Below, piece after piece: positions 29,100 through 56,838 of a stretch of 64,000 nucleotides of DNA. Position numbers and translations under genes: made by a program. The stretch is taken from positions 62,001 through 126,000 of IMG/VR virus record IMGVR_UViG_3300036766_002289; one strand, 5' to 3'. The notes beneath the pieces are model-generated. The model did no database searches. It was not told where the DNA came from and saw nothing but the letters and a program-made list of their open reading frames with translations. Positions within the stretch are counted from its first letter, which is position 1, and each line of letters begins with the position of its first letter.

Positions 29100-29105
29100 T
29101 GGTAT

Positions 29106-32100: not shown

Positions 32101-33392
32101 GTGATCCTTTCTTGGATGCAACAATTCTATCTGGCCAGATTGGCAGTGGTACGATTGGTGGAATACATATTGCTTCAGGGCAAATCGGGAACAATCAGTT
32201 TGCATCAGGAAATATGCCTAACCCTGGTTATCTTTATGGATTAGGCTTAACTTGGGTTAGTTCAGGTCAGATTATCGTTGGCAGTGGCGTGGCTATGGAT
32301 AGCACTGGCTATACTAACATTTGGCTCCCAACAAGAACTACCGTAATGATTTCAGGAACTAATGGTGGCCCTGCAAGTATGGATATTTCGCCTATAGGTA
32401 ACGTAAGTATCCTTACATCTGGGTCCATTGTCTCAGGCGCAACGAACATGTTTTTACTATGGCCTATGAAAACAGGAACAGGCTTAATTGCTTTCAGTGG
32501 AACGGCAGGAATTGTAGGCAGCGGCGGCGACTCACTTAATCAAATTGCAGTTGGCGACTTAGTTGGAACTTCAGGGCAGTCATTCTGGAGAGTAACAGCG
32601 GTCAATAGCGGCACATTTACAACTGCGATTTCAGGCGGTCTGACTTCAGGCTCCAAGTTGAACATAATTGAGAATGCATTCTTTAGTACAAGTGGTCAAA
32701 TTTCTTGTGTCGTGAACAATATTCTCAGTGGAATCAGCATGACGCTTGGCGGTGTGCCGAAAGCAAGCGGTAACACGGTGCCAGGCTTTATCGGTGGCGC
32801 GCCTAATAACGTCACAAGCGGGTTCCAATCATATTTGATGGCATGGGTAAGTCAGGGTTTAAGTGGAACTACGGCATTCTTGTCTACACAGAGAACCACT
32901 CCATTAGTGTCTGGCATTAACGGCTATCAGACTTATTTCCGTCGTGTTGGTAGTGTTATTTATAACGGTTTCTCTGGACAGATTGTGCCATTCGATCAGT
33001 GGGGCAATGCAGGTTATGGTAAATTTACACAGTTTGAAGTTCCAAACCATACTAATAACACTGTTATTTTCAGTGGTACTCTTAGTGGTTTGGCAGCGGT
33101 TTGGGCTGGACTTGATTGTTCAAAAGTTGCACCACCTACTGCGACGGCAATTAAATTTAATGCTATTAATACATCTCCAACAAGTGGTGGTGCTATTTAC
33201 TTCCGCAAGAGGGGTGCTGGCGAATCAACAGGCACAAGAAATATTAGGTCTATGGGTCTTCAGTCTGGTTTGATTACCTCCTACTTATTTGATTGTGCTT
33301 GTGACGGTGTGCAGAGCATTGAATATGCTTGGCCGATTTCAGGTCTTCAGTTGCAGCTTGACGTTGTTGGTTATTTCGAACCACAGTTCTAA
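29106..33392 (+). CDS. second Ser-Gly-rich fibre protein (1428 aa) with YadA-head-like segment and unique C-terminal domain
   Basis: 6 QGFFG repeats; 2 globular modules; NTAFG/NTGFG/NTAIG repeats. Confidence 0.85.
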   Translation: MGVPLVFDTSTGITTARPFIASDNVFASGVVASGVIASGAVQGFFGTTRNIASGTLGVFDFGSGAVIAGAVGSGAIVSGNIASGQIGQFHIASGAVTSGRLGVTGTPDGTKFLRDDFTWSSPIISGSIQSGMIASGAVQGFFGSTRNIASGTVGVFDFGSGAVIAGTVGSGAIVSGNVASGQIGQAHLASGIIAVFTDSVSAAKGNVAAGPGVNAISGSRNTAFGYTVLNNSRGSSGNTGFGFQSLFACSSGWYNTAIGATALVNFQWGSGNVAVGAGAIGPIDGTFGMSGASSAISFNTAIGQQAGTHISSGALNNVLVGAFAAGSGLQAGHDNTVIGTLANVTNPDAAFRGVFGAAAVDAGVDNSVFIGRSGRDTVYVFRLASGTVTSGMLGVTGTPDGTKFLRDDFTWASPIISGSIQSGMIASGAVQGFFGSTRHIASGTVGVFDFGSGAVIAGTVGSGAIVSGNVASGQVGQFAISSGAVTSGRLGVTGTPDGTKFLRDDFTWTAPTATVASGGIQSGMIASGAVQGFFGSTRHIASGTVGVFDFGSGAVIAGTVGSGAIVSGNIASGQLSTFHFASGAKIDSAEWLIDDIFVTNEVISGGKAVAFNQSGQLVIAMAGVSGRMPAVGILPTNVASGSAATIYRNGRLFNTIFNFSGWTGSEVFVGQSGDVVASGNPTNSGAVQQILGVSIAGSGIMIQIGDPFLDTIIQSGSIGSGAVQGFFGSTPNIASGTVGVFDFGSGAVIAGTIGSGAVVSGNIASGQVGNFAISSGAVTSGRLGVTGTPDGTKFLRDDFTWVTPAGGSVTSGGIQSGMIASGAVQGFFGSTRHIASGTIGVFDFGSGAVIAGAVGSGAIVSGNVASGQISTFHFASGAGIDSAEWIATNNFSTAELISGGKAVAFNQSGQLVIAMAGVPSRMPAIGILPTNEASGNVALVYRNGRLFNTVFNFSGWTGQSVFVGQSGDVVASGSPTNSGAVQQALGESIYGSGLMIQLGDPFLDATILSGQIGSGTIGGIHIASGQIGNNQFASGNMPNPGYLYGLGLTWVSSGQIIVGSGVAMDSTGYTNIWLPTRTTVMISGTNGGPASMDISPIGNVSILTSGSIVSGATNMFLLWPMKTGTGLIAFSGTAGIVGSGGDSLNQIAVGDLVGTSGQSFWRVTAVNSGTFTTAISGGLTSGSKLNIIENAFFSTSGQISCVVNNILSGISMTLGGVPKASGNTVPGFIGGAPNNVTSGFQSYLMAWVSQGLSGTTAFLSTQRTTPLVSGINGYQTYFRRVGSVIYNGFSGQIVPFDQWGNAGYGKFTQFEVPNHTNNTVIFSGTLSGLAAVWAGLDCSKVAPPTATAIKFNAINTSPTSGGAIYFRKRGAGESTGTRNIRSMGLQSGLITSYLFDCACDGVQSIEYAWPISGLQLQLDVVGYFEPQF

Positions 33393-33402
33393 TTAGGAGC
33401 AT

Positions 33403-34467
33403 ATGTTAAGACAAACAATTGCAGTAGCTCATAGCACTACACCTTTTGCTACCTTGTATCCTTGGGGTGGTACTTATTGGACCATAATAGCTAATCCTTC
33501 AACGTTACCTGCTAGTACTGGACAAGATATCAAATGGTCTCCAGATGGAGCTTATGTTGCAATAGGTCATAGCACCACTCCATTTGTAAGTGTATATCCT
33601 TGGACTGGTCAATTTGGGGCTAAATTTGCAGACCCATCAACTTTGCCTCCAGCCGCAGGGAATTGCGTTGCGTGGAGTCCTCGCGGTGATTTCATTGCAG
33701 TTAGTAGCAGTACTACTCCATTCATAAGTGTATATCCTTGGAGTAGTGCTGGATTTGGTGCAAAGGTTGCAGACCCTTCAACTTTACCTACTGGTACTGG
33801 TGTTTTCGGAATGGTTTGGTCTCCTGATGGCAATGCTATTGCACTCGCTGTAAATGATATTAGTAATTTCATCATTGTGTATTCTTGGAGTAGTGCTGGG
33901 TTTGGCTTTAGATATGCTAATTATGTTACCCCGTCAAACACTGGAACTGGAAATTCTGTTGCGTGGTCTCCAGATGGAACTGCAATTGGTGTTACCATTT
34001 TTAACACTCCAGGCATATATACGTGGCCTTGGAGCGGCATTACTGGTTTTGGTGCTAGAATTGCTGATCCTACAACTCTTCCTGGTGGTGCAGGAACTAA
34101 CGGATGCAGTGGTTTTGCATGGTCTCCAGATGGGGCTAATATTGCTATGACGGTCAATGATACTCCTTTTATAGCGGCGTATCCTTGGACTACAAAATTC
34201 GGGGCTAAATTTGCTGATCCATCTACTTTGCCTGTCAGTGGAAACCTTGTTAAACGTAATACTCTTGCATGGTCCCCAGATCAAAAATATGTTACGGGCA
34301 CAACGTCCACTACTCCTTTTATATTTGTTTATCCTTGGAGCAATAGTACTGGACTAGGTACTAAAATTGCTGATCCTTCAACTTTACCAGCAGGGGCTAC
34401 TGGAGGTTGTGCATGGCTTAATAAGCCAATATTACCTAATGCAAAGGTCGTATTTGGCACTGGTTAA
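33403..34467 (+). CDS. 7-bladed WD40-like beta-propeller, paralog 1
   Basis: YPW..FGAK.ADPSTLP..AWSPDG repeats. Confidence 0.85.
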   Translation: MLRQTIAVAHSTTPFATLYPWGGTYWTIIANPSTLPASTGQDIKWSPDGAYVAIGHSTTPFVSVYPWTGQFGAKFADPSTLPPAAGNCVAWSPRGDFIAVSSSTTPFISVYPWSSAGFGAKVADPSTLPTGTGVFGMVWSPDGNAIALAVNDISNFIIVYSWSSAGFGFRYANYVTPSNTGTGNSVAWSPDGTAIGVTIFNTPGIYTWPWSGITGFGARIADPTTLPGGAGTNGCSGFAWSPDGANIAMTVNDTPFIAAYPWTTKFGAKFADPSTLPVSGNLVKRNTLAWSPDQKYVTGTTSTTPFIFVYPWSNSTGLGTKIADPSTLPAGATGGCAWLNKPILPNAKVVFGTG

Positions 34468-34480
34468 GGATATATAAATT

Positions 34481-35411
34481 ATGCTAAAGTTGACATTGGC
34501 GGTTTCGTCAAACTTAACACCGTTTATACAAGCCTATCCTTTCAGTGGAAATTTTTGGCAAAAAGTACCTGATCCTTCAACTCTGCCTGGCGGTTCCCAA
34601 GGAACAGGCACCTGTTGGTCGCCGCGAGGCAGTTATGTTGTGGCACTAAGTAATGCATCTCCTTTTATCCAAGCCTATCCTTGGACTGGTCAATTTGGGG
34701 CTAAAGTTGCAGACCCTACAACTTTACCTCCTGGAGAATGTTTAGATGCAGCATGGCGACCAGATGGCAATTTTATTGCAACGGCTGGATTCACCGCACC
34801 ATGTATAACTGCGTATCCTTGGACTGGAACTGGATTTGGTGCTAAAGTTGCAGACCCAGCCATAGTTCCTTCTAGCACAGGTTGGAGTGTTGCATGGAGT
34901 CCAGATGGCAAGTTTATTGCTGTTGGTAGCGATGTTTCTCCTTTTTTACAAGTATATCCTTGGACTGGAGGTGGGTTTGGTGCTAAAGTTGCAGACCCTT
35001 CAGTAATATCTGTTGGACAATGTTGGGGGGTAAAATGGTCTCCAGCTGGAGATTATATTGCTGTTGGTTGCTCTAATACGCCTTTTATACAAGCTTATTC
35101 TTGGAGCAATAGGTCATAACACTTCGCCTTTCATGAGCGTATATCCTTGGAGTGCTGGATTTGGAGCTAAAGTTGCTGATCCTTCAACTTTACCTGCTGG
35201 CAATGGCTGGCGTATTGCTTGGACACCGCAAGGTGATTATATTGTTTTAGGGCATGATACTACACCATTTGTTAGTGTCTATCCTTGGACTGCTGGGTTT
35301 GGGGCTAAGCTTGCTGATCCTAGCACATTACCTGGAGATAGTGGTTTTGGTGTGGCTTGGCTCCCTCCACCAACATCATATGTTGCCAAGGCATTATTCG
35401 GTTCAGGTTAA
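34481..35411 (+). pseudogene. beta-propeller paralog 2, frameshifted by a deletion at ~35106-35110
   Basis: ORFs 34481..35119 and 35058..35411 join at GCAAT microhomology. Confidence 0.7.
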
Positions 35412-35422
35412 TATATAATAAT

Positions 35423-36469
35423 ATGCTTCAAACTTCAGTTGCAATCGGCTCGGATACGACCTCGCCTTTTTTGTTTGCTTATCCTATAAATGGACAATTT
35501 TATACTAAATACGCAGACCCATCAACGATTCCAACTGGTACTGGTTCTAATGGTGTTGCGTGGAGTCCTGATGGTTCTTATTTTGCTATCGTACATAATG
35601 CATCACCGTTTGTAAGTGTATATCCTTGGACAGGGCAATTTGGTGCTAAAGTTGCTGATCCATCTACTTTGCCCCCCAATACGACAGATACTGTTTTTTG
35701 GTCGCCTGACATGAAATATATTGCTGTTACTTTTCAAGTGACGCCTTTTATATATGTATATCCTTGGAGTAGTGCTGGGTTTGGGGCTAGATTTGCTAAC
35801 CCATCAACGCTTCCTGCTGGTATTGGTTATTGTTCTGCATGGTCTCCTGATGGGCAGTTTCTTGCTGTTAGTCAGCTTACTTCTCCATTTATAGGTGTAT
35901 ATCCTTGGAGTAGTGCTGGATTTGGGCCTAGATTTGCTAACCCATCAACGCTTCCTGCTGGGGCATGTCGTTGGGTTACATGGTCCCCAGATGGAGCATT
36001 TATTGGAATGGGTGTTACAAACACGCCATTTGTAGCAGTGTATCCTTGGACTACTCAAGGATTTGGTGCTAAAATTGCGAACCCTACAACTTTGCCTCCT
36101 GCTTCATCTGGTTGTACAGGCATGTCATGGAGTCCAGATGGAAACTATGTTGGTTTGGTTGGTGATTCTAGTCCTTTCATAAGAGTTTATAACTGGACTA
36201 GTGCTGGATTTGGAACTCCTGTCGCTGATCCTAGTACTTTGCCCAATAGTGTTGCTCGCGGAATTGCATGGTCTCCTGATGGAACCTATGTTGGTGCTTC
36301 TGTCGCAGTGAATCCTGAGATAGTCGTATACCCTTGGAGTGCTGGATTCGGGGCCAAGCTTCCTGATCCTGCAACTGTGCCTGCTGGGACTTCTTTAACA
36401 ATTACATTTACTGGTTCTCAGGCTAAGCCGAAAGCAAGAAAACCATTTAACTCAATTGACTATATATAA
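35423..36469 (+). CDS. beta-propeller paralog 3
   Basis: Same repeat; MLQTSVAIG start. Confidence 0.85.
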   Translation: MLQTSVAIGSDTTSPFLFAYPINGQFYTKYADPSTIPTGTGSNGVAWSPDGSYFAIVHNASPFVSVYPWTGQFGAKVADPSTLPPNTTDTVFWSPDMKYIAVTFQVTPFIYVYPWSSAGFGARFANPSTLPAGIGYCSAWSPDGQFLAVSQLTSPFIGVYPWSSAGFGPRFANPSTLPAGACRWVTWSPDGAFIGMGVTNTPFVAVYPWTTQGFGAKIANPTTLPPASSGCTGMSWSPDGNYVGLVGDSSPFIRVYNWTSAGFGTPVADPSTLPNSVARGIAWSPDGTYVGASVAVNPEIVVYPWSAGFGAKLPDPATVPAGTSLTITFTGSQAKPKARKPFNSIDYI

Positions 36470-36471
36470 TC

Positions 36472-37500
36472 ATGCTTAAACAAGTCCTTGCAGTGGCTCA
36501 TTTTTCAACTCCTTTTGTAAGTGTATACCCCTGGAGTAATAATTTTTGGGGGAAAGTTGCCGATCCTTCGACTTTGCCACCTAATCTTGGCCACGGTGTT
36601 GCATTTAGTCCAGATGGTGCTTTTATTGCTGTGGCACATAGTACAACTCCTTTTGTAAGTGTATATCCTTGGACTGGACAATTTGGTGCTAAAGTTGCAG
36701 ACCCCACAACACTTCCTACTGGTTCTGCCAATAAGGTTGCTTGGAATCCTGCTGGCAATTATATTGCCGTTGCACATGGAACTTCCCCTAGTATAAGTGT
36801 TTATCCTTGGACGACGGCAGGATTTGGTGCTAAAGTTGCGGACCCTTCAACTTTGCCAAATGGTGATTGTTTTGGTCTCGCTTGGTCGCCTAAAGGTGAT
36901 TACATTGCCGTAGGGTTCAATAATAACTCTCCTTTTATAAGTGTGTATCCTTGGAGCAATGGATTTGGTGCTAAGTTTGCTAATCCTTCTGCACCGCTTG
37001 GTGGGACTGGAGAAGGTGTCGCATTTTCCCCAGATGGTAATTATATAGCTGTGGCTCAAGATAGCAGTCCTTATATAAATGCATATCCTTGGAGTAGTGC
37101 AGGATTTGGAAGTATAGTTACCGCACCCACCACTCTTCCTGGTTTACAAGCCTTCGCTGTAAGCTGGTCTCCAGATGGGGCTTATATAGGGGTAGGACAC
37201 GGTAATTCTCCGTTCGTAAGTGTTTACCCTTGGAGTGCTGGGTTTGGTGCCAGACTTGCTAATCCTAGTACATTGCCGCCTAATCAGGTTACAAATTTAG
37301 CATGGTCTCCAGATGGAGCTTATGTTGCTCTGGCACATGCAACTAATCCTGATGTAAGTGTATATCCTTGGAGTGCTGGATTTGGGTCTAAGCTAGCTGA
37401 CCCTTCTACTTTGCCAGTTGGAGGTGGTAATAGCGTTGCTTGGTTTAATCCAAATGTTATAAATCACCCAAAATCTTTATTTGGCACTAATATATTTTAG
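36472..37500 (+). CDS. beta-propeller paralog 4
   Basis: Same repeat. Confidence 0.85.
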   Translation: MLKQVLAVAHFSTPFVSVYPWSNNFWGKVADPSTLPPNLGHGVAFSPDGAFIAVAHSTTPFVSVYPWTGQFGAKVADPTTLPTGSANKVAWNPAGNYIAVAHGTSPSISVYPWTTAGFGAKVADPSTLPNGDCFGLAWSPKGDYIAVGFNNNSPFISVYPWSNGFGAKFANPSAPLGGTGEGVAFSPDGNYIAVAQDSSPYINAYPWSSAGFGSIVTAPTTLPGLQAFAVSWSPDGAYIGVGHGNSPFVSVYPWSAGFGARLANPSTLPPNQVTNLAWSPDGAYVALAHATNPDVSVYPWSAGFGSKLADPSTLPVGGGNSVAWFNPNVINHPKSLFGTNIF

Positions 37501-37506
37501 AGGAAT

Positions 37507-39842
37507 ATGTTAAAATTATCACTTGCAGTAGCACATACCACGACACCCTTTATAAGTGTATACCCTTGGAATGGCGGATTCTGGACGAAGAATGCTAATC
37601 CTAGTACATTACCTGCGGGTGATTGTGTCAATACTGCATGGTCTCCTAATGGTGCTTATGTAGCAGTCACAACTGGCACTTCTCCTTATATAGCTGTCTA
37701 TCCTTGGACAGGGCAGTTTGGTGCTAAATTTGCTGATCCACAGGTTTTACCTGCTGTTCCTGGTGATGTACAATGGTCTCCTAAAGGAGATTTTATTGCT
37801 GTAACTCACACTGTCGCTAATTACATACATGTTTATCCTTGGAACAGTTCTGGTTTTGGTGCGCCAGTAGCGGACCCAGCAACGCCACCTACTGCAAATA
37901 CCATAGGTGTTGCATGGCGTCCCCAAGGTGATTATATTGCTGTTGCCTATGGTGCATCACCTTGGTTAAATGTTTATTCTTGGAATAGTGCTAGTGGATT
38001 TGGTGCCAAAGTTGCTGATCCTAGTACATTGCCAACTGGTATTGGGAATTGTGTTACGTGGTCTCCTTTGGGAGATTATGTTGCCATAGGACATGCCACT
38101 TCCCCTAATATAAGTGTATATCCTTTTTCAAATGGTACATTAGGTGCTAAAATAGCTGACCCTAGTACATTACCTGGGAATACTTGTGTAGGGATACAAT
38201 GGTCTCCACTTGGTAATTTTATTGGTGTTGCTGTCATTGTTTCTCCTTTCGTAGTTGTATATCCTTGGAGTGCTGGATTTGGTGCCAAAGTAGCTGATCC
38301 TAGTACATTACCAGCCAGTACTGGCAGGGGATTATCGTGGTCTCCTGCACAAGATTACCTTGCAGTCGCTCATGATAGTACGCCATTTATAAGTGTATAT
38401 CCGTGGACTGGCACTTTTGGTTCTAAGTTGGCCAACCCTGGAGTATTGCCAGCTAGTGATGGTAAGGACGTTGCGTGGCTTAATGTTCCACAAGTATCCA
38501 AAACAAAGACTTTATTTAATCCGTTTAATCCTAAATCCATATCTGGTTTGGTTTCTTGGCATGATGCTAGTGTTCAGTCATCCCTTTGGCAGAATAGTAC
38601 CAGAACTACGCCTGTAACATCTAATAACGATCCAATTGGTGGCTGGGATGATTTAAGTGGTAATGGATATCACATTATTCAGTCTACGAATGGCAGTAGG
38701 CCACTTTACAAAACTAGTATGCTTAATAACTTGCCAGTGATCCGTGCGGACGGTGTTGACGATTACTTAACTAATGCATCATACACTAATGGCACTACTT
38801 GGTCTATTTTTGTGGTTTGTAGAAGGCTTACCAATAATGTTAATTGTAGATTTCTATGTATTTCTCTAAATGCATCCCCAGGTGGTTCCACTAGTATTAA
38901 TTTATTCAACGACACTACTGGAGTTTTTGGTTATTATGGTGATAACGTGGCTGGTGCCCCTGTATTTTCTCCAGGCAATGATACAATATTTTCTCTTGCA
39001 GAACTTTTATTAACTGGTGGTGGCACGGGAAACGCATATTACAATGGTAATTTGGCAGGCACTTGGACGATGCCAACTCTGTTTTGTCAGCTGCGAATAG
39101 AATCAAAGTAGAAAACTATTTAATGAAAAAATGGAGTCCATTTACATTTACTCCAAATCTAATTCCTGGTTTGTCAGCGTGGTATGATTCAACAAAATTA
39201 ACTTCATTATGGCAAAATAGTACTAGAACAACATCTGTGAAAGTAGATGGTGATTTAGTTGGTGCTTGGGATGATTTGAGTGGGAACGGCAATCATGTTA
39301 TACAATCTGTTAATATAAATAGACCGACATATAAAACTGCTATACAAAATGGCAATCCAATTGTTCGTTTTACTTTTGCAAACGGGACGTTCTTGGCCAA
39401 GACATATGGCACTCTTTTAAGTCAACCAAGTACAATTTTTTGGGCTGGATCATTTGGAAGTCATATAAACACTTTCATTTATGATGGTGTGGATGCAACT
39501 AATAGAAATGTTTTGTGTCATGGACCAAGTGGTAGTGCTGTAAATTTTGGAGCTTTTGCTGGTGTGTCCTTGGAAGCTGCACACGCCATACCAATTGCGG
39601 CAGGGGTATGGTCTGTCGTATTTAATGGTGGTTCAAGTCAGATATGGCAGGATGGAGCTTCATTTACTTCTGGTAATGCGGGGGCGGCAGCAATGGGTGG
39701 TCTAACGATGGGAGCCGCATATACTGGTGGGGCCAATGCTGATGAAGATACTTTTGAATTGATTATATACAACAGGTTGTTAACCACGGATGAGCGACAG
39801 CAGGTGGAAAGGTATCTAAAACTTAAATGGGGAACTCCATAA
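37507..39842 (+). CDS. beta-propeller paralog 5 fused to two LamG/ConA-like lectin domains; frameshift or deletion at ~39074-39078
   Basis: GLVSWHDAS..WDDLSGNG and GLSAWYDS..WDDLSGNG..IIYNRLLT..VERYL; split across ORFs 37507..39111 and 39063..39842. Confidence 0.7.
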
Positions 39843-39881
39843 AATTTAAATAATTTTTTTTAGAACTTACTATATCAATTT

Positions 39882-40535
39882 ATGCCAGCATCATGGGAAA
39901 TAGCTAATCAACAAAGAGTGCTTGTAGTGATCTTAACAAGAGAAACAACCAGCACAGCCTGGGCATCTGGATTTCGTAATCTTCGCATACCAGGAACACA
40001 CGTATTCCTTACGGGAATGCCATTCGATCATGCCAGAAACGTAGGGTGCCAAAAGCTCCTTGAATTTGGCTGGGAATGGTTATTCTTCTTGGATGACGAT
40101 GTGATTGCACCGTCAGACGCTATTGAAAAATTGGTGAGTCGTAACTTACCAATTATTAGTGGTTTATATTACAGAAGAAGTCCACCAATTGCTCCAGTAA
40201 TGCTGAGAGAAAATAAAGAAGGTAGAACCTGGGTAACTGAATTTAAAGTACCAGATTTAATGCCTGTCGATTATGTTGGGGCTGGTTGTTTACTCATACA
40301 TAGAGACGTTATAAGGTCATTGCCCCCATTAAGTTCAAAATGTCATTGGTTTGAGTGGCGTGTAGACCGAGTTGATCTTCCAGCAAATCAACGTATGTCA
40401 GAGGACTTTGCTTTTTGTCAACATGCTAGAAGTCATGGTTATAAGATAATAATGGACACAAGCGTACAGTGTCGTCACGCGGGACTTGGTGAAAGTAGAA
40501 TCGGTGGTCAATTTATTCCTTTGGAGTTGGTATGA
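39882..40535 (+). CDS. GT-A (GT2-like) glycosyltransferase
   Basis: DHARN..LFFLDDD..GAGCLLIHR..SEDFAFC..H. Confidence 0.88.
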   Translation: MPASWEIANQQRVLVVILTRETTSTAWASGFRNLRIPGTHVFLTGMPFDHARNVGCQKLLEFGWEWLFFLDDDVIAPSDAIEKLVSRNLPIISGLYYRRSPPIAPVMLRENKEGRTWVTEFKVPDLMPVDYVGAGCLLIHRDVIRSLPPLSSKCHWFEWRVDRVDLPANQRMSEDFAFCQHARSHGYKIIMDTSVQCRHAGLGESRIGGQFIPLELV

Positions 40536-41557
40536 AAATATGTGTAATTTCTACAACTGTTCTTGTTTGTCCACCTCCTGGATATGCAGGACTTGAACAA
40601 CTTGCATGGTTACAAGCAAAAGGTCTAGCCGCCAAAGGCCATAAGGTGACATTAATTGCGCCAAAAGGCTCAACGGCACCACCTAATGTAGAAATGCATG
40701 AAACAACATTAGGAGAAGAAGAAAAACAAGCTTATAGTGGCTATTGGCAAAAGTTGTCTGGATTTAATTGTATCATTGATAACTCCTGGCAGAAATGGAG
40801 TTATATGTTAAAGATGGAAGGCAAACTAAAAGCACCTATTTTAGGCGTAGTACATGCTCCGATCAATACTATGTATAGTGCAGCACCGCCCAACATAGAG
40901 TCTCCTTGTTTTGTTGCTATAAGTAAAGATCAGGCAAAGCATATTAAGGAACATTTGAAGTGCGATTCGAGAGTTGCCTATAATGGTGTTGATGTTGATT
41001 TTTATAAGCCAGATGGGACAGCCAGGAATAATAGATACTTGTTTTTAGCCAGAATGAGCAGTATAAAAGGTCCAGATATTGCTATAAATTCAGCTAAAAA
41101 ATGTAGAGTAGCACTAGATTTAGTAGGGGACGATACAATAACTGGAGAACCAGATTTTTGTAACTTTTTAAGACAACAATGTGCGTTAACTCCTGGTTTA
41201 AGATATATTGGACCACAAAGTAGAGATGACTGTGTTATGTGGTTTAACATGAATAAGGCATTACTACATCCTAATAAGATATTTAGAGAACCATTTGGGC
41301 TTGCTCCTGTAGAAGCTCAGTTGTGTGGAATGCCTGTAATAGCTTGGGATAACGGGGCAATGAGAGAAACAATCAAGAATAAGGAAACTGGATTTTTGGT
41401 TAAATCCGAAGAAGAGTTTGATGAATTAATTAGAACCAACGCGGTTAAATCAATTAATGCAAAAAGATGCCGCGAATGGGCAAGTCAGTTCTCGTATGAG
41501 AATATGATTGATAAGTATGATGAACTTTGTAAAGAAGCAATTGAGGAAGGATGGTAA
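40532..41557 (+). CDS. GT4 glycosyltransferase
   Basis: PPPGYAGLE..YNGVD..KGPD..EPFGLAPVEAQLCG. Confidence 0.92.
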   Translation: MKICVISTTVLVCPPPGYAGLEQLAWLQAKGLAAKGHKVTLIAPKGSTAPPNVEMHETTLGEEEKQAYSGYWQKLSGFNCIIDNSWQKWSYMLKMEGKLKAPILGVVHAPINTMYSAAPPNIESPCFVAISKDQAKHIKEHLKCDSRVAYNGVDVDFYKPDGTARNNRYLFLARMSSIKGPDIAINSAKKCRVALDLVGDDTITGEPDFCNFLRQQCALTPGLRYIGPQSRDDCVMWFNMNKALLHPNKIFREPFGLAPVEAQLCGMPVIAWDNGAMRETIKNKETGFLVKSEEEFDELIRTNAVKSINAKRCREWASQFSYENMIDKYDELCKEAIEEGW

Positions 41558-41560
41558 ATT

Positions 41561-41992
41561 ATGACAAAGACTAAGGCTAAGAAGTCACCAAAAGCTACTA
41601 AGGTTGCCAAGGTGAAGAAGGTTGTATATGCATTCGACGTGGATGATACCTTGGAGGTATCAAAGGGTCCAATCAAGATGCAACAATTGATGGATTTAAG
41701 AGTTGATGGACATATTGTCGGATTATGTGGCAATGTTATTCCTGTATTATCTGTGGATGGATGGGAACACCTTATTTCCTTCTTTAACGTAGGTATGCCT
41801 AAAGATGCTTATCTCAATGAAGTAAAGAGATTCGTCAGGGCCGATGACTATGTGTTTGTAGGAAATGTTGGCCCAATTGATAGTGCCTATTTGAAGGTAC
41901 CACAAACTGGTGCCTCCGATGACATGGGCGCTGCAATGCGTTCAAGTTGGAGATTTATCACTGAAGCAGATTTCGCCAATGGAACTCGATAA
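41561..41992 (+). CDS. HAD-like phosphatase
   Basis: AFDVDDTL..FVGN..DD. Confidence 0.7.
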   Translation: MTKTKAKKSPKATKVAKVKKVVYAFDVDDTLEVSKGPIKMQQLMDLRVDGHIVGLCGNVIPVLSVDGWEHLISFFNVGMPKDAYLNEVKRFVRADDYVFVGNVGPIDSAYLKVPQTGASDDMGAAMRSSWRFITEADFANGTR

Positions 41993-41994
41993 TT

Positions 41995-43017
41995 ATGAAA
42001 AAGTTATTGTATGTGACCTCAGATAAAATTGGGGAAGAAACTGGTGCAGGTGCGGTTACACAAAACGAGTTGGATAGTCTAAAAAAACTCGGTGCGACTG
42101 ATGTTTTAAACCCTGCACCCCAACAAGACCCCTTTGAAAGCGATGAGATTGCTTTAAATCAGTGTGAAGGTGCGTATAAATTAGCGCACTTTTACGCTGG
42201 AACTTATTCCAAACTTATCAGCTTTCTAAAGAGTAAAGGTACCAAAATTACCTATACTGCCGCTGCACATGATGTAAAAGTAAGCAAAGAAGATCATGAG
42301 AAATTTGGACAGATTTTTGATTATCCACACTTAACCGATCCAGATTTATGGAAGAGATATTTGGAAGGATACAAGAGTGCAGATGTAATCATTTGTCCGT
42401 CTACGCACAGCAAAGAAGTCATGGAAAGCTATGGATGCAAGAAGGTTAAGGTGATACCACATGGATGTTACGTGTCACCTGCTTTTGAGCCTATTCCTAA
42501 AGTGTTTAGGGTTGGATACTTAGGTGCGGTTGGATTTGATAAAGGTCTTGTTTATCTTTTACAAGCTTGGGCTAAGTTGAATTATAATAACACTTATCTT
42601 ACATTGGCGGGCAGACATACTCCAAGTATCATGCATTTAGTTCGTCAATATGGTGGTGGCTCAATTTATCTTGCAGGATGGTTGAAGTCGGCTTCAAATT
42701 TATACAATTCGTGTTCAGTGTATGTCCAACCAAGTGTTTCAGAAGGTTTTGGGTGTGAGGTAATTGAGGCAATGGCTCATGGACGCCCTGTTATTTGCTC
42801 AGATGGAGCAGGTGCGGTAGATTGTGTGACCCACGAAAAAGATGGTATCATTGTGCCTAAAAGGAATGTCAAGGCGATTGCTGATGCTATTGACTTCTAT
42901 AAAAAGAATCCTGATACGCTTTATGAACATGGTAAAAATGCCAGAGAGAAGGCTAAGCAATATTCTTGGGATTTAATAAGAGAAAAATATTATAAATTGT
43001 GGAAGGATATGGTATGA
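41995..43017 (+). CDS. GT4 glycosyltransferase
   Basis: KGLVYLL..PSVSEGFGCEVIEAMAHGRPVI. Confidence 0.92.
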   Translation: MKKLLYVTSDKIGEETGAGAVTQNELDSLKKLGATDVLNPAPQQDPFESDEIALNQCEGAYKLAHFYAGTYSKLISFLKSKGTKITYTAAAHDVKVSKEDHEKFGQIFDYPHLTDPDLWKRYLEGYKSADVIICPSTHSKEVMESYGCKKVKVIPHGCYVSPAFEPIPKVFRVGYLGAVGFDKGLVYLLQAWAKLNYNNTYLTLAGRHTPSIMHLVRQYGGGSIYLAGWLKSASNLYNSCSVYVQPSVSEGFGCEVIEAMAHGRPVICSDGAGAVDCVTHEKDGIIVPKRNVKAIADAIDFYKKNPDTLYEHGKNAREKAKQYSWDLIREKYYKLWKDMV

Positions 43018-43646
43018 GCTACGATAAAGTAAAATACCAAGCTGAGTACAGAGAGAAAAACAAAGAAAGACTTAACAACTACGACAAAATTCGTAATTCA
43101 ACTGATGAACGTAAGTTGAAGAAAAGTCTAAATCATAAAAAATACTATGCTCTAAACAGAGAAAAAGTAATCGAGCGAACTAGAGAGTACAAAAAAACAC
43201 ATCCTGAATTAAAAATTTTTATTGGGGCTTGGAGAAAAGAATTAAATCAAATTTGGGGTGTTGGCCAAAAAGTAGCATCCCAAGAAGTTGGGTTTAAAGC
43301 TGAAGCAATTATTGCTGCACTGCTTCCGAGCGAAGGTTATCAAGATGTTTATTATGTTGCAGACGACAAGCATTATGCCAATTTTCCAATTGATGTTTTT
43401 GCCAAGAAAGATGGTTTTATACACGCATTCCAAGTAACAACATATCCAAAACGAAAAATTACTTCTAGATTAAGAGATTTAGTCTCATATATGGGTTGGA
43501 TTTTGCATATTACTTTTGTAAGACCTAATTTAAGAGACTATTATGATATAGTAGTCTCATCTGATAGAAAAAACGTCGCTGTGCCAATTGATATTGTAAT
43601 GAAAGAAGGGAGATTGATTCCAAATGAGTTACAACTTACCATTTAG
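43014..43646 (+). CDS. putative free-standing endonuclease (PD-(D/E)XK-like) with basic helical N-terminus
   Basis: YREKNKERL repeats; E..PIDVFAKK..AFQV. Confidence 0.5.
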   Translation: MSYDKVKYQAEYREKNKERLNNYDKIRNSTDERKLKKSLNHKKYYALNREKVIERTREYKKTHPELKIFIGAWRKELNQIWGVGQKVASQEVGFKAEAIIAALLPSEGYQDVYYVADDKHYANFPIDVFAKKDGFIHAFQVTTYPKRKITSRLRDLVSYMGWILHITFVRPNLRDYYDIVVSSDRKNVAVPIDIVMKEGRLIPNELQLTI

Positions 43647-45249
43647 TGAAGGTCAAAAAATAATTGAGTTGGGCGGGGGTCAATTCCCTCGTTTTCGGCC
43701 CAATGTGGACATACGCAAAGAAGATACAGTCGATCTTGTTGCTGACTTCGATGACCCACTTCCGCTGAACCCAAATGAATGGCATGGTGTATTTTGCAGT
43801 TACGTTTTAGAGCATATTTCTTATCGTAAAATTAAACAATTTATCACAGAAGTCCACAGAATCCTTAAGCCAGGCGGCATTGCCGTATTTATTACTGCAA
43901 ACACAGAAGCTCAGATGGAATGGGTTCTGGGACAAAAAGATTGGGACGACCGAGCCTCTTCAATTCTTTATGGCGACCAAGACTATAAAGACAATACACA
44001 CAAGAACACACTTTCACCGAAATATGTTTTTAAACTGCTTCAGGAATTAGGATATAAAGATATCTTTGTCATGCCTTGGGGTGAATTAGGCACCGACATG
44101 ATAATTGAAGCTAAAAAAGAAGTTACAGAAAGAAAAAACTTATTCGATAAGCATTATTTCAATGGTGGTAAAAAAGTCGGCGGTTATGCCAGAGAAGGTT
44201 ATTGGGACTACCCCGTCCATAATGTGACTTTTGATAAAGTAATGGAGCTAAAGCCTAAATCTGTACTGGAAATTGGCTCATCGAGAGGGTATATCCTCAA
44301 GAGAATTCAGGACACAGGTATCCCTGTTCTTGGTTTAGAAATATCTAAGCACTGTTATCTTACTAGAGCAATTAAAGAAATAGTTGAATGGGATTTGTGT
44401 AAGTTTCCGTGGCCAGTCAAAGACAAGGCATTCGACCTAGCTATAAGCTGTGCAGTATTAGAACATATACCAGAGGAACATCTGCCAAGCTTGATTAAGG
44501 AATTAAGTAGAGTAAGCAAGCGTGGTCTTCATGGTGTCGATTTTGGCGAACATGATGATGGTTTTGATAAGACTCATTGTACACTTAAAAAGAGAACTTG
44601 GTGGGAAGAAAAAATGCCTGCCAAACAAGAAGTTATTAATAAGGAAGAATTAGAACAGGGTTCATTATTGAGACATATTCCTGCTGGGGACGATAAGTTG
44701 AAGCTTAATATTGGTTCATTTATAAATCAATTCCACTATGGTTGGTTGAACATGGATATTATTGACCTTAATCAATTTGCAAGGCAAAATTACTATAAGT
44801 TCTTCGCAAGAGATGTTAGAGAAGGACTACCATTTGCAAATAAGTCTGTTGACCTAATGTATTCAAGTCATTTCATCGAACACTTAACATACGCTGAAGC
44901 CAAGGCATTTATTAATGAGTGCAAGAGAGTGATGAAGGAAAATGGGACTGTAAGATTGCTCATTCCAGACCTTGAATTATTGTTTAATAAGTACAAGAGC
45001 AATGAATTAGGCATGTTTGATGAAATCAACGATGATTCGGCATCTTTCAGTACTCAGGCGAGCAAATTGTGGACATTGTTGTTCTCAGGGCATAAGGCCG
45101 CGTTTGATTTCAATACAATCAAAGAAATGGGCACTGAGGCTGGATTTAAAGTAGAGAAAAAGTCATTTAGAGAAGGTCATCCACAAATTATTAAAGAAAC
45201 AATTGATATGCTTCCAGACTTAAGCTTGTTTGTGGAACTCTCTCAGTGA
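43624..45249 (+). CDS. triple-domain SAM-dependent methyltransferase
   Basis: IELGGG..VLEH; LEIGSSRG..VLEH; LNIGS..HFIEH. Confidence 0.85.
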   Translation: MSYNLPFSEGQKIIELGGGQFPRFRPNVDIRKEDTVDLVADFDDPLPLNPNEWHGVFCSYVLEHISYRKIKQFITEVHRILKPGGIAVFITANTEAQMEWVLGQKDWDDRASSILYGDQDYKDNTHKNTLSPKYVFKLLQELGYKDIFVMPWGELGTDMIIEAKKEVTERKNLFDKHYFNGGKKVGGYAREGYWDYPVHNVTFDKVMELKPKSVLEIGSSRGYILKRIQDTGIPVLGLEISKHCYLTRAIKEIVEWDLCKFPWPVKDKAFDLAISCAVLEHIPEEHLPSLIKELSRVSKRGLHGVDFGEHDDGFDKTHCTLKKRTWWEEKMPAKQEVINKEELEQGSLLRHIPAGDDKLKLNIGSFINQFHYGWLNMDIIDLNQFARQNYYKFFARDVREGLPFANKSVDLMYSSHFIEHLTYAEAKAFINECKRVMKENGTVRLLIPDLELLFNKYKSNELGMFDEINDDSASFSTQASKLWTLLFSGHKAAFDFNTIKEMGTEAGFKVEKKSFREGHPQIIKETIDMLPDLSLFVELSQ

Positions 45250-46308
45250 GTTTTTTGCTAGGCTCCAATCACCATTTAGACGCATAATACGTGTTTTGGG
45301 GTACCAATAGGTCGTTTCATCGTCAATTCCCCAACGCCAATCGTGTTGTTTGCCCAATAATAGAATAGTTGGTATCCCCATCGCCCCAGCAATATGTGCA
45401 ACTGCCGTATCTACTGATACTACTACATCCATTTCGCTAATTAGATTGGCGGTTTCTTGAAGTGTTGAGAAATTGTATGATACGATATCATCTTTAACAT
45501 CTTTTGTAAGATTGTATAATACTCTATCTTCGTTCTTTAATTCCAATAAGTGCTTAACATCACATGAACGATGTTTATTATTTTTGTATGTTGGGTTCCC
45601 TTTCCAGCATACGCCAATTTTCAGTTTGTCAGTTTGTTGGGGAAATTTTCTAATTTTAAGACCTGGGCTGTTGATTTCTCTGGAGAAAATATAAGGTTTG
45701 TTTGGAATTTTGTCCTTAGTAATCTTGAATTTATAAGGCAAACTTCCAATAGACACAGCACAATCAAAGTCAAAAGAAGGAATCGGTGGTTGTTTACCTC
45801 TTGTAACGATGATATCGCAGTATTGCTCAGTGAATAAGCCATTCATTTCTTCGGCACATTCGACTATGATCTTTTTGAAGAACTTCTTAAGCATAGGTAG
45901 GAATCGCATATATTGCACCATGTCGCCTATGCCTTGTTCATTGTAAACATAGATAGTATTGCCTTTCTTTTTACCATCCCAATGGTTCCTGAAGCGGTCA
46001 TGATACATGGAGAATGTATCATTTACTTTGAAACGACATTCGAATTCTCTGAAGAAGTTTGGTAGGTCGTGTTTAATGCCGTAGCAGGTTGCTAGGTTAT
46101 AATGGGCTAATGGAAAATCTAATTTCTTGTAATGAGAGATTGCTTCGTCTATTTTGCGTAAATTGTAGCAACAAATACCAAGATAGAAATCTACTCTTTG
46201 TGTGGTTTTCTCTGACGGACAATCTTTCAGAAGACCATATACGGATTGGTAGTCTTCTTCGTTAATTAAAATTTCGCATTGATTGCAGGTTTCAAACCAA
46301 CTACTCAT
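45220..46308 (-). CDS. TPR + GT9-like glycosyltransferase
   Basis: TPR helices; EQGIGDMVQYMRF; IGVCWKGNP; VVSVDTAVAHIAGAMG..WRW. Confidence 0.88.
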   Translation of the reverse strand: MSSWFETCNQCEILINEEDYQSVYGLLKDCPSEKTTQRVDFYLGICCYNLRKIDEAISHYKKLDFPLAHYNLATCYGIKHDLPNFFREFECRFKVNDTFSMYHDRFRNHWDGKKKGNTIYVYNEQGIGDMVQYMRFLPMLKKFFKKIIVECAEEMNGLFTEQYCDIIVTRGKQPPIPSFDFDCAVSIGSLPYKFKITKDKIPNKPYIFSREINSPGLKIRKFPQQTDKLKIGVCWKGNPTYKNNKHRSCDVKHLLELKNEDRVLYNLTKDVKDDIVSYNFSTLQETANLISEMDVVVSVDTAVAHIAGAMGIPTILLLGKQHDWRWGIDDETTYWYPKTRIMRLNGDWSLAKNSLREFHKQA

Positions 46309-46330
46309 TGAATCACCTATATATACTAGT

Positions 46331-47347
46331 ATGTTAAAGTTAACAATTGTTGTCGGGCATAGTACTACGCCATACATAAGCGTGTACCCCTGGAGTAATA
46401 ATTTTTGGACTAAGATTGCTGATCCATCGACTTTGCCTGGGGTTCAGTCTACAGTGACAGTATTGTCTCCAGATGGGAATTATGTTGCCGTAGGGTCTAA
46501 TGGTTCACCTTTTCTACAAGTCTATCCCTGGACAGGACAATTTGGTAATAAAGTTGCTAATCCTAGTATTGCGGCTACAGGTGGAGTTGGTGTTGCTTGG
46601 TCTCCAAATGGTGATTATATTGCAACGGCCTCCCTCTCTTCACCATATATTAACATATATCCTTGGAGCAATGGTGCTTTCGGAGCTAGGTTGCCCGACC
46701 CTTCACCATTACCTCCTTTAACTTCTAGGAATATATCATGGTCTTCAGATGGCAATTATATTGCACTTACCAGTGACACTTCGCCCAGAGTGGTTGTCTA
46801 TCCATTTAATAATGGTGTTTTAGGTAGTAAGTTTGCCGACGCATCTACAATTCCTCCAGGGGCAGGAGGGGGTGTGGCATTCTCCCCCAAAGGGGACTAT
46901 CTTGCGGTAGGTTTTGGAACTTCTTCCCCATTTATATATGTATACCCTTGGAGCAGTGCTGGATTTGGTACTAGAGTTGCTGATCCTAGTACGGTACCTA
47001 CGAATCAGATAAAGGGAATAGCTTGGTCCCTAGACGGAACGTATTTAGCATGTGCATCGGCGGCAACACCTTTTATATTAGTATATCCTTGGAGTGCTGG
47101 ATTTGGAGCAAAACTTGCTGATCCTAGTACTTTACCTACTGGAGCGGGACAAGCCGTAGCATTTAGTCCAGATGGAGCATATATTGCTGTAGCTCATACC
47201 ACTACGCCTTTTGTAAGCGTCTATCCTTGGAATGCGGGATTTGGTGCTAAACTTGCTGATCCTAGTACTTTACCTACTGGCAATGGTGATGGCGTGGCAT
47301 GGCTAAATCCACCAAACTTGAAGCATTTGGCTAGGTGTTTAACTTAA
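46331..47347 (+). CDS. beta-propeller paralog 6 (displaced from the array)
   Basis: MLKLTIVVGHSTTP; same repeat. Confidence 0.85.
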   Translation: MLKLTIVVGHSTTPYISVYPWSNNFWTKIADPSTLPGVQSTVTVLSPDGNYVAVGSNGSPFLQVYPWTGQFGNKVANPSIAATGGVGVAWSPNGDYIATASLSSPYINIYPWSNGAFGARLPDPSPLPPLTSRNISWSSDGNYIALTSDTSPRVVVYPFNNGVLGSKFADASTIPPGAGGGVAFSPKGDYLAVGFGTSSPFIYVYPWSSAGFGTRVADPSTVPTNQIKGIAWSLDGTYLACASAATPFILVYPWSAGFGAKLADPSTLPTGAGQAVAFSPDGAYIAVAHTTTPFVSVYPWNAGFGAKLADPSTLPTGNGDGVAWLNPPNLKHLARCLT

Positions 47348-56837: not shown

Positions 56838-56838
56838 A

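What the first reader, a model, noticed from the sequence alone, without database searches (positions are those of the whole stretch)
33403..47347. Six-member beta-propeller repertoire with constant scaffold and variable loops
Seen: six paralogs built from a ~44-aa blade (YPWxxGFGAKxADPSTLP-[variable]-AWSPDGxYIAV-[variable]-PFV). Variation is concentrated in the two bracketed loops (ASTGQD, GGAGTNGCSG, VSGNLVKRNT, PGECLD). Blade-specific marks (blade 1 F/Y-W/Y, blade 2 WTGQFG) are kept in all copies, indicating whole-gene duplication. Most end in a short K-x-(L/V)-F tail (KVVFGTG, KALFGSG, KSLFGTN, KTLFNP), and one carries two LamG-like domains. Inference: interchangeable receptor- or glycan-binding heads docked on the SG fibres, which would broaden host range.
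Basis: partly seen in the sequence, partly recalled or inferred. Interest (0 to 1): 0.7.

Follow-up and report, generated by a model that had tools for sequence, protein, structure and literature searches.

The report
Tandem WD40 propeller genes beside phage fibres
A very large phage from sediment carries six diverged copies (five intact, one broken) of a seven-bladed WD40-type propeller gene next to its giant fibre genes; their variable loops and their relatives point to host-binding tips of tail fibres, but binding and attachment to the virion are not shown.

Summary
There are six paralogues, at 33403-39111 and 46331-47347. Each has seven blades of about 46 aa. An AF2 model of copy 4 has pLDDT 94.9. 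The repeats are true WD40 repeats (phmmer to PDB 2YMU, E 2.6e-18).

Variation and all indels sit in two loops per blade, the end of the D-A loop and the B-C turn. Identity there is 22%, against 61% in the scaffold. By WD40 topology both loops lie on the top face. Blade-specific marks hold, and the five intact copies form one clade of old duplicates.

- Copy 2 is broken by a deletion with a frameshift at about 35105.
- The propeller-LamG-LamG gene is interrupted at about 39055, so the second LamG lies in another frame.

The family is large (1,527 clusters at E<=1e-30). The propeller is usually the C-terminal domain of fibre-like proteins. One relative shares the N-terminal domain of the neighbouring 2,482-aa fibre. 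A free-standing copy lies between tail fibre genes in a prophage.

Docking on the fibres, ligand binding and selection on the loops are untested; dS is saturated and the complex prediction gave no answer. I class it as a new variant of a known kind, the multi-adhesin phage.

The parts
33403..34467 (+). c1: intact seven-bladed WD40-type propeller, 354 aa. It has the longest D-A loop insertions (blades 5 and 6) and the tail KVVFGTG.
34481..35119 (+). c2, 5' part: blades 1-4 and the start of blade 5, then a stop. The gene is broken by a deletion of about 30 codons with a frameshift at a GCAAT microhomology near 35105.
   Evidence: reproduced by an independent assembly
35058..35411 (+). c2, 3' remnant in another frame: the end of blade 5, blade 6, the blade-7 strands and the tail KALFGSG.
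35423..36469 (+). c3: intact propeller, 348 aa from the ATG (the mechanical ORF starts at TTG 35357). Its tail is divergent.
   Evidence: the JGI gene call is also 348 aa
36472..37500 (+). c4: intact propeller, 342 aa. This is the copy that was modelled (pLDDT 94.9; tail residues 326-342 are disordered).
37507..38517 (+). c5, propeller domain (about aa 1-337 of the 534-aa ORF 37507-39111).
38533..39111 (+). c5, first LamG-like domain, cut short by a frame break near 39045-39065. Its last helix is encoded in the -1 frame.
39063..39842 (+). ORF in the -1 frame that holds the end of LamG1 and a complete second LamG/ConA-like jelly-roll domain. A possible independent start is the ATG at 39123.
   Evidence: Atlas model pTM 0.93; TM 0.86 by the query to a cluster in which 24% of members carry Laminin_G_3
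46331..47347 (+). c6: intact propeller, 338 aa from the ATG (the mechanical ORF starts at TTG 46283). It has no K-x-L-F tail and is separated from the array by the glycosyltransferase/methyltransferase island.
21585..29033 (+). Context, fibA: 2,482-aa Ser/Gly-rich fibre with 14 VQGFFG modules. Its N-terminal ~95 aa is the domain found joined to propellers in P0135 and P0094.
29106..33392 (+). Context, fibB: 1,428-aa Ser/Gly-rich fibre with 6 VQGFFG modules and a unique C-terminal ~430 aa. It ends 10 nt before c1.
39882..46377 (.). Context: an island with two GT4 glycosyltransferases, a multi-domain methyltransferase, a GT9/TPR protein on the minus strand and unknown genes. It lies between c5/LamG and c6 and has lower GC.

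Best explanation
The six genes are a lineage-specific family of free-standing seven-bladed WD40-type beta-propellers, five intact and one decayed. They arose by old whole-gene duplications inside this very large phage.

Each blade keeps a nearly invariant scaffold. This covers strands A-C, the A-B turn SPDG, the C-D turn after YPW, and the GFGAK-ADPSTLP segment. Two segments vary freely: the last 6-8 residues of the D-A loop and the 4-5-residue B-C turn.

By canonical WD40 topology both variable segments lie on the top face around the central channel. That is the usual ligand-binding surface of WD40 domains. The 14 loops differ from blade to blade and from copy to copy. Each paralogue therefore shows one asymmetric, unique top surface on a common chassis.

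I infer that they are virion-surface binding modules of the tail-fibre apparatus, each recognising a different structure on the host surface. They would be made together with the two giant Ser/Gly-rich fibres encoded just upstream. One copy is extended by ConA/LamG-like lectin-fold domains.

Shown here: the fold, the repeat register, where the variation lies, the history of duplication, the two gene lesions, and the fibre context of relatives. Inferred only: virion location, ligand binding, attachment (possibly through the short disordered C-terminal tail), and any effect on host range.
For: Fold and family:
- AF2 model with pLDDT 94.9 and pTM 0.91, seven blades.
- Best Foldseek matches are WD40 propellers.
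- phmmer to the canonical WD40 structure 2YMU gives E 2.6e-18. The alignment puts the variable segments on the GH loop and the DDK turn.
- Pfam WD40 scores exceed the gathering cut-off for five of the six copies; c5 scores 21.1 against 27.

Variation:
- Per-column entropy and all indels fall in the two loops.
- Identity is 22% in the loops against 61% in the scaffold. pN is 0.56 against 0.26.
- The same profile appears across 1,917 blades of 239 homologues.

History:
- Blades of the same index are more alike than other pairs.
- The five intact copies form one clade (SH-aLRT 93) with long branches.
- DNA identity between copies is only 60-85%, with no conversion tracts.
- Scaffold dN/dS is about 0.3, so the copies are maintained.

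Fibre context:
- fibA matches tail-fibre PHROGs, and c1 starts 10 nt after fibB.
- In relatives the propeller follows Mtd_N, fn3, TIG or Collar domains.
- The N-terminal domain of fibA is joined to a C-terminal propeller in P0135 and P0094.
- A tail assembly chaperone gene follows in two phages.
- In POR1 a collagen-like gene overlaps a free-standing propeller gene.
- A prophage has the order TMP, Dit, tail protein, J, propeller, two small ORFs, tail-fibre N-terminal fragment, tail fibre.
- Fusions to discoidin and chitin-binding modules occur.
- The LamG domains match a PHROG of virion structural proteins.
Against: - There is no direct evidence that any of these proteins is in a virion or binds anything.
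- The copies in this window lack the N-terminal anchor domains that their relatives have, and no attachment mechanism is shown.
- The complex prediction of c1 with the fibB C-terminal domain gave no answer.
- A conserved scaffold with variable top-face loops is what any WD40 family shows.
- Loop dN/dS is about 0.7 with saturated dS, which fits relaxed constraint as well as diversifying selection.
- Two lesions in the array (c2 and c5/LamG) suggest that part of it is dispensable.
- In some small phages the gene lies beside head genes, for example after the portal in L018 and before the protease and capsid genes in L003. A head-fibre or decoration role is therefore not excluded.
- No solved phage receptor-binding protein appears among the 50 best PDB matches listed.
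Confidence: 0.55

Rival explanations
1. The propellers are virion decoration or fibre-decoration proteins without ligand specificity. They could sit on head fibres, capsid or fibre surfaces. The loops would differ only because they are structurally unconstrained, so the copies are redundant structural variants.
For: - Loop dN/dS is about 0.7, not above 1, and dS is saturated.
- The same variable columns are seen family-wide, as in any WD40 family.
- In L003 and L018 the gene lies among head genes, next to proteins with head-decoration-like PHROG hits.
- One copy has decayed.
Against: - Five copies have been kept intact over long divergence, with scaffold dN/dS about 0.3.
- In relatives the propeller takes the distal C-terminal position that receptor-binding domains hold, for example after Mtd_N.
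- In a prophage it lies in the J/side-fibre host-specificity region.
- Lectin-fold partners occur: LamG, discoidin and chitin-binding modules.
Confidence: 0.17
2. The propellers are not virion components. They would be WD40 scaffold proteins acting inside the infected cell, for example in fibre folding or assembly, or with the neighbouring glycosyltransferase/methyltransferase island to modify the Ser/Gly/Thr-rich fibres.
For: - WD40 domains are classic protein-protein scaffolds.
- Genes just downstream of fibre genes are often assembly chaperones (established knowledge for T4 gp38/gp57 and lambda or Mu Tfa).
- The array borders an island of glycosyltransferases and methyltransferases.
- The copies have no signal peptide and no anchor domain.
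Against: - In most relatives the propeller is covalently part of fibre-like proteins, up to 5,692 aa long.
- Where a dedicated tail assembly chaperone is present, it is a separate gene downstream.
- Five diverged chaperones for two fibres would be unusual.
- In the loci of relatives examined (L001, L003, L018-L022, L024, L025), no glycosyltransferase was annotated or detected near the propeller genes.
Confidence: 0.13
3. The propellers are multivalent propeller lectins, like the PLL, AAL, RSL or tachylectin types. The conserved repeated motif (Trp, Phe, Lys, Asp of YPW...GFGAK-ADP) would form up to seven equivalent sugar pockets, with the variable loops only modulating binding.
For: - The most conserved residues recur in every blade and include aromatic and acidic side chains.
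- Fusions to carbohydrate-binding modules occur in relatives.
- A LamG lectin fold is attached to c5.
Against: - By topology the conserved segments lie mostly on the bottom face and rim and look structural.
- No propeller lectin is among the 50 best PDB matches listed.
- This reading is a sub-case of the main explanation, with a different binding site, rather than a true alternative.
Confidence: 0.1
4. The copies are silent cassettes that recombine onto a fibre gene to switch specificity, or products of active loop hypermutation by a DGR-like system.
For: The copies are arranged in tandem and share repeated 40-60-nt conserved stretches that could support recombination.
Against: - Each copy has its own ATG at the first strand and its own upstream motif.
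- No fibre gene in the genome carries a propeller.
- DNA identity is only 60-85%, with no recent exchange tracts.
- The apparent joints in the assembly are cross-matches between paralogues.
- No reverse transcriptase is found in the genome.
Confidence: 0.03

Closest known systems
Canonical WD40 repeat propellers (Pfam PF00400; e.g. PDB 2YMU from Nostoc, 5YZV from Thermomonospora)
   Same: Both have seven four-stranded blades with Velcro closure. The repeat register is the same (..V-A-F/W-S-P-D-G..I-A..), with sequence homology at E 2.6e-18. The variable D-A and B-C loops form the top face.
   Different: YPW replaces the WD dipeptide, and a Pro-rich ADPSTLP segment replaces the GH loop. Strand D is reduced to one or two residues in the model. 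The setting is a phage fibre locus rather than cellular signalling.
PHROG 19311 and uncultured-phage 'WD40/YVTN repeat' proteins; Pseudomonas phage POR1 Orf76, Salicola phage CGphi29 SLPG_00037, Xanthomonas jumbo phage XacN1 ORF384, MW202701 'WD40 repeat protein'
   Same: They belong to the same sequence and structure family (PHROG E down to 1e-27; BFVD TM 0.82-0.86). They lie in or beside fibre or tail genes.
   Different: None has been characterised, and the PHROG function is 'unknown'. Most phages carry one or two copies, often fused to anchors or inside giant proteins. Here there are six free-standing tandem copies.
Five-bladed propeller 'platform' of staphylococcal phage receptor-binding proteins (phi11 Gp45, 80alpha, P68; PMC4901313, PMC7048315, PMC6795507)
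   Same: A beta-propeller serves as the distal, sugar-recognising domain of a phage receptor-binding protein. This is the nearest functional precedent; I take the details from the papers' titles and abstracts and from general knowledge.
   Different: Those propellers have five blades and are not WD40 repeats. They are part of a trimeric receptor-binding protein with stem and tower domains. They do not appear among the 50 best PDB matches listed.
T2/S16-type gp38 adhesin on the tip of the long tail fibre (S16 gp37-gp38 tip; listed in PMC6851490)
   Same: A separate small adhesin gene lies just downstream of the fibre gene. It has a conserved scaffold with hypervariable loops that set host range (established knowledge).
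   Different: The fold is unrelated (polyglycine-II sandwich against WD40 propeller). There is a single copy, and its attachment to the fibre tip has been demonstrated, which is not the case here.
Multi-RBP jumbo phages (RaK2-like phages, PhiK64-1) and Bordetella phage BPP-1 Mtd
   Same: Large phages that carry many receptor-binding proteins on branched fibres are known. The N-terminal domain of Mtd precedes the propeller in several relatives, so there the propeller takes the place of a known variable receptor-binding domain.
   Different: Those systems use beta-helix depolymerases or a C-type-lectin fold diversified by a DGR. This genome has no reverse transcriptase, and the binding module would be a WD40 propeller.

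Membership tests
WD40 / beta-propeller superfamily | Closed propeller of about seven four-stranded antiparallel blades | tested here: met
   The AF2 model has pLDDT 94.9 and 21 strands in seven groups. Strand D is reduced to a one- or two-residue bridge. Best Foldseek PDB matches are WD40 propellers, TM 0.6-0.84.
WD40 / beta-propeller superfamily | Sequence match to the WD40 repeat profile or to a solved WD40 protein | tested here: met
   PF00400 scores 36.6-47.6 bits against a cut-off of 27 for five of six copies; c5 scores 21.1. phmmer to 2YMU gives E 2.6e-18 with the repeats in register.
WD40 / beta-propeller superfamily | GH and WD dipeptide signatures | tested here: not met
   The positions hold (T)LP and (Y)PW instead. 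The signatures are not obligatory for the family.
Phage tail-fibre distal (receptor-binding) domain | Encoded in the tail-fibre or host-specificity module | tested here: met
   The array lies directly downstream of two fibre genes. A prophage has the order J, propeller, two small ORFs, tail-fibre N-terminal fragment, tail fibre. In POR1 the gene follows a collagen-like gene. Exceptions lie beside head genes.
Phage tail-fibre distal (receptor-binding) domain | C-terminal to a fibre anchor or shaft in the same polypeptide | tested here: inconclusive
   Met in relatives: 104 of 239 have only an N-terminal extension, and Mtd_N, fn3, TIG and the fibA N-terminal domain occur there. Not met by the window's own copies, which are free-standing.
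Phage tail-fibre distal (receptor-binding) domain | Present in virions and binds a host surface receptor | not testable with these tools
   The phage is uncultured, from a sediment metagenome. The XacN1 paper gives no virion data for ORF384.
Fibre-docked adhesin (gp38-like logic): docking of the free-standing propeller on fibA or fibB | A physical complex with the fibre | tested here: inconclusive
   The complex prediction of c1 with fibB residues 1000-1428 scored 0.00. The tool's verdict was 'no answer'.
DGR-diversified variable protein | A reverse transcriptase (and template repeat) in the genome | tested here: not met
   PF00078 finds nothing in the 390-kb record, while the control genomes respond.
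Podovirus nozzle protein propeller (T7 gp12 / P22 gp10) | Structural match to the nozzle propeller with its platform and fibre-dock domains | tested here: not met
   No nozzle protein is among the 50 best PDB matches listed. The proteins consist of the propeller alone. The idea came from PMC13730344.
LamG / ConA-like lectin-glucanase fold (for 38533-39842) | Jelly-roll fold or a Laminin_G_3 profile match | tested here: inconclusive
   There is no Pfam hit at E<=0.1. The Atlas model (pTM 0.93) matches a viral cluster in which 24% of members carry Laminin_G_3, with TM 0.86 by the query (0.40 by the longer hit), and the nearest neighbours by features include Laminin_G_3 clusters. The fold is supported by predicted structure only.

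The most novel reading that the evidence does not exclude
These propellers would represent a large, unrecognised class of phage receptor-binding module: a WD40 chassis with an antibody-like variable top face, at least 1,500 clusters at 50% identity, in proteins of 330 to 5,692 aa. In this very large phage the module would have become a set of free-standing adhesins. They would plug into the giant Ser/Gly-rich fibres through a short conserved C-terminal peptide, giving one virion several specificities.
Probability: 0.25. Interest if true: 0.7.

Novelty: new variant of a known kind. Interest (0 to 1): 0.5.

Why it matters
If the inference holds, WD40-type propellers are a widespread phage host-recognition module that has not been characterised. 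PHROG 19311 is listed as 'unknown function', and I found no paper on it in the searched library.

A compact single-domain scaffold with 14 variable loops on one face would help host prediction from metagenomes. It would also be a natural binder scaffold.

The array shows how a very large phage could gather several specificities by duplicating and losing genes, rather than by a DGR or by cassette switching. Cultured relatives such as Pseudomonas phage POR1 and Salicola phage CGphi29 make the idea testable in ordinary laboratory strains.

Tried and rejected
- DGR-driven loop diversification: no reverse transcriptase in the genome.
- Recent blade or gene recombination: DNA identity between copies is 60-85% with no long identical tracts. 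The three 'joints' from read-laying are cross-matches of the c6 region on paralogous blades.
- Assembler artefact as the cause of the c2 and c5 breaks: Logan contigs of the source run span both sites with no differences. This is the same sample at about 12x depth, and contigs hide minor variants, so a sequencing or consensus error is not fully excluded.
- Programmed -1 frameshift at the c5/LamG junction: there is no canonical slippery heptamer at 39040-39065. Not excluded.
- Site-wise dN/dS: not meaningful, because pS is about 0.6 between paralogues and the nearest outside relatives are about 50% identical.
- Docking test: no answer.
- Identity of the fibB C-terminal domain: only two homologues and weak Atlas leads, so I did not model it.
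- Tail assembly chaperone PF16778 in this genome: none found, but the control genomes were silent too, so this is uninformative.
- Sigma-70 promoters and terminators inside the array: not above the shuffled expectation.
- Near-DNA search of GenBank phages: no match.
- Literature: no paper links this WD40 family to phage fibres. The XacN1 paper and its supplement give no virion data for the propeller-bearing ORF384.
The assignment to one face rests on WD40 topology, DSSP and the 2YMU alignment.

Full report
**Setting**

The window is positions 62,001-126,000 of a 390,039-bp IMG/VR virus record with a CheckV completeness of 98%. That record is the right-hand ~390 kb of a 590,099-bp JGI contig from a sediment metagenome.

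Two giant Ser/Gly-rich proteins are encoded just upstream of the finding. The first, here called fibA (21585-29033, 2,482 aa), matches tail-fibre and virion-structural PHROGs. The second, fibB (29106-33392, 1,428 aa), has no family match. fibA carries 14 and fibB 6 copies of a ~100-aa 'VQGFFG' module.

**Check of the observation**

A search of the genome with copy 4 finds six related genes and no others. They are:
- c1, 33403-34467
- c2, 34481-35119 plus 35058-35411
- c3, 35423-36469
- c4, 36472-37500
- c5, 37507-39111
- c6, 46331-47347

Each is built of seven units of 45-52 aa. The N-terminal ~20 residues supply the last two strands of blade 7.

An AF2 model of c4, made with 62 aligned homologues, is a seven-bladed propeller. 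Its pLDDT is 94.9 and pTM 0.91. Only the last ~17 residues are disordered.

The repeats are true WD40 repeats:
- Pfam WD40 is above its gathering score for five of the six copies; c5 scores 21.1 against 27.
- phmmer to the solved WD40 protein 2YMU gives E 2.6e-18 with the repeats in register.
- The best Foldseek PDB matches are WD40 propellers.

**Where the variation lies**

I aligned 41 blades and computed per-column entropy. It is high only in the last 6-8 residues before strand A (the end of the D-A loop) and in the 4-5-residue B-C turn. A few single outward-facing positions also vary. Every insertion or deletion lies in those two loops.

Among the five intact copies, mean pairwise identity is 22% in each loop class and 61% in the scaffold.

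The 2YMU alignment puts the first variable segment on the GH loop and the second on the DDK turn. By established WD40 topology both loops form the top face. The conserved SPDG and YPW-S-x-GFG turns form the bottom face. I could not verify this on coordinates, because they are not exposed to the scripting box.

The loops differ between blades of one protein as well as between copies. The top surface is therefore asymmetric and unique to each paralogue.

The same entropy profile appears across 1,917 blades of 239 homologues. 'Constant scaffold, variable loops' is thus a property of the family, and of WD40 proteins generally. It is not special to this array.

**History of the copies**

- Blade 1 (F-W/Y) and blade 2 (TGQFG) marks are present in every copy.
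- Blades of the same index are more alike (51.5%) than blades of one protein (46.9%) or unrelated pairs (46.4%). None of 2000 label shuffles reaches this value.
- The five intact copies form one clade among 62 family members (SH-aLRT 93), with long terminal branches of 0.43-0.72.
- DNA identity between copies is 60-85%, with no long identical tracts.

Scaffold dN/dS is about 0.3, so the copies are maintained. Loop dN/dS is about 0.7, but pS is about 0.6 and saturated. Diversifying selection can be neither shown nor excluded. No reverse transcriptase is present, so a DGR is not involved.

In c2 the reading frame ends at 35119 after blade 4. The DNA shows W-S-N joined directly to A-I-G-H-N through a shared GCAAT. 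About 30 codons of blade 5 are missing and the frame shifts. The remaining blades and the KALFGSG tail are read in another frame.

In c5 the propeller is followed by a LamG-like domain. The C-terminal helix of that domain, and a complete second LamG-like domain, lie in the -1 frame (39063-39842). The break is near 39045-39065.

The two LamG-like domains share 56% identity over their first 72 residues. For the second domain:
- The Atlas model has pTM 0.93.
- It matches a viral cluster, 24% of whose members carry Laminin_G_3, at TM 0.86 by the query.
- Pfam itself finds nothing.

Logan contigs of the source run span both breaks without a difference. This is the same sample at about 12x depth, so sequencing error is unlikely but not excluded.

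As the sequence stands, the array is five intact propellers, one pseudogene and one interrupted propeller-LamG-LamG gene.

**The C-terminal tail**

c1, c2, c4 and c5 carry K-x-(L/V)-F about ten residues after the last strand. c3 has a degenerate form and c6 has none.

In c5 this segment is simply the linker into the LamG domain. In the shorter copies the tail may therefore be a remnant of that linker rather than a docking peptide.

Free-standing homologues elsewhere mostly end right after the last strand and instead have a short N-terminal extension. The tail is disordered in the model.

**What the relatives say**

The family is large. It has 16,742 clusters at E<=1e-3 and 1,527 at E<=1e-30, in proteins of 330 to 5,692 aa. 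No member in this set has a characterised function.

Of the 239 fetched homologues:
- 104 have only an N-terminal extension.
- 77 are free-standing.
- 33 have both N- and C-terminal extensions.
- 25 have only a C-terminal extension.

Where the N-terminal parts could be identified, they are Mtd_N, fn3 and TIG, with a phage tail Collar domain on record for one further protein.

The non-propeller parts of the homologues were searched against this genome. Two proteins, P0135 (1,032 aa) and P0094 (482 aa), have a first ~95 residues homologous to the N-terminus of fibA (43-45% identity, E about 1e-10) and a propeller at the C-terminus. The middle of P0135 matches tail-fibre PHROGs.

The gene for P0135, and the double-propeller gene of podovirus MW202701, are each followed by a short ORF and a tail assembly chaperone gene.

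Other contexts:
- In Pseudomonas phage POR1 a collagen-like gene overlaps a free-standing propeller gene.
- In Salicola phage CGphi29 the propeller protein follows a 1,418-aa protein and a 299-aa protein.
- A prophage of Candidatus Magnetaquiglobus has this order: tape measure, distal tail protein, tail protein, central tail fibre J, free-standing propeller (41% identity), two small ORFs, a 127-aa ORF like a tail-fibre N-terminus, tail fibre.
- Fusions to discoidin and chitin-binding modules occur.

There are counter-examples. In L018 the gene follows the portal gene. In L003 it lies between Ig-like fibre/decoration genes and the head protease.

**Interpretation**

The best-supported reading is that these are binding modules of virion fibres, with the variable top face as the binding surface.

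Several points remain inference:
- Whether the free-standing copies of this phage are in the virion.
- How they attach.
- What they bind.
- Whether they widen host range.

The one direct test I could run was a predicted complex of c1 with the fibB C-terminal domain. It returned 'no answer'.

The nearest functional precedents are these:
- The five-bladed propeller platform of staphylococcal phage receptor-binding proteins (PMC4901313).
- The gp38-type adhesin encoded downstream of the T2/S16 long tail fibre.
- Jumbo phages with many receptor-binding proteins.

The fold differs from the first two precedents, and none of the three uses tandem free-standing copies. I therefore rate the finding a new variant of a known kind, of moderate interest.

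Noticed in passing
window 34468-34480, 35410-35422, 36459-36471, 46318-46330, 39869-39881; genome-wide: A TATATA motif lies 4-10 nt upstream of the ATG of c2, c3, c4, c6 and the gene at 39882. Genome-wide, 26 of 484 long ORFs have it within 25 nt of the start, against about 3 expected, mostly at -15 to -8. It may be a phage-specific promoter or a leaderless-start signal. The class of the other genes was not determined.
   Followed up: partly
whole record / JGI contig Ga0373622_0000005: The 390-kb 'provirus' record is about positions 200,021-590,059 of a 590,099-bp metagenome contig and reaches its right end. Either the left 200 kb is host DNA, or the phage genome is much larger than 390 kb.
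   Followed up: partly
window 39882-46377: An island of two GT4 glycosyltransferases, a methyltransferase with three methyltransferase-like stretches, a GT9/TPR protein on the minus strand and unknown ORFs splits c6 from the array. Its GC is lower (37-40% against 44-45%). It could glycosylate the Ser/Thr/Gly-rich fibres.
   Followed up: no
window 47353-47428 (-), 4631-12513 (+): A tRNA-Met gene lies 6 nt after the c6 stop on the opposite strand. Six more tRNA genes (Arg x3, Ile, Thr, Gly) lie at 4.6-12.5 kb.
   Followed up: no
window 48726-49811 (-): An ORF combines LAGLIDADG and HNH homing-endonuclease matches, just beyond c6.
   Followed up: no
window 54954-59870 (+): This looks like a second small paralogous set. 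Three ORFs (627, 335 and 227 aa) share a PHROG 19068 domain. The first also has a tail-fibre-like N-terminus.
   Followed up: no
D-A loops of c1-c5 (e.g. 36861-36880, 34715-34735): Thirteen of the 16 cysteines in the aligned blades sit in the variable D-A loop, often in adjacent blades (c3 blades 3-5, c5 blades 4-5). Family-wide the same columns hold only a few per cent Cys. Possible disulfides or metal sites near the channel mouth.
   Followed up: partly
window 21585-33392: fibA and fibB are mosaics of a ~100-aa VQGFFG...FLRDDFTW module (14 and 6 copies) interleaved with a repeated ~120-aa globular insert. The fibB C-terminal ~430 aa has only two detectable homologues.
   Followed up: partly
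window 34172-39195 (fragments): A second sediment metagenome from a different study (run X2) holds 151-nt contigs identical to this region at about 2x depth. The same phage therefore occurs in another sample.
   Followed up: no
window 35771-35961: Blades 3 and 4 of c3 share a nearly identical ~50-nt stretch. The independent assembly breaks there.
   Followed up: no
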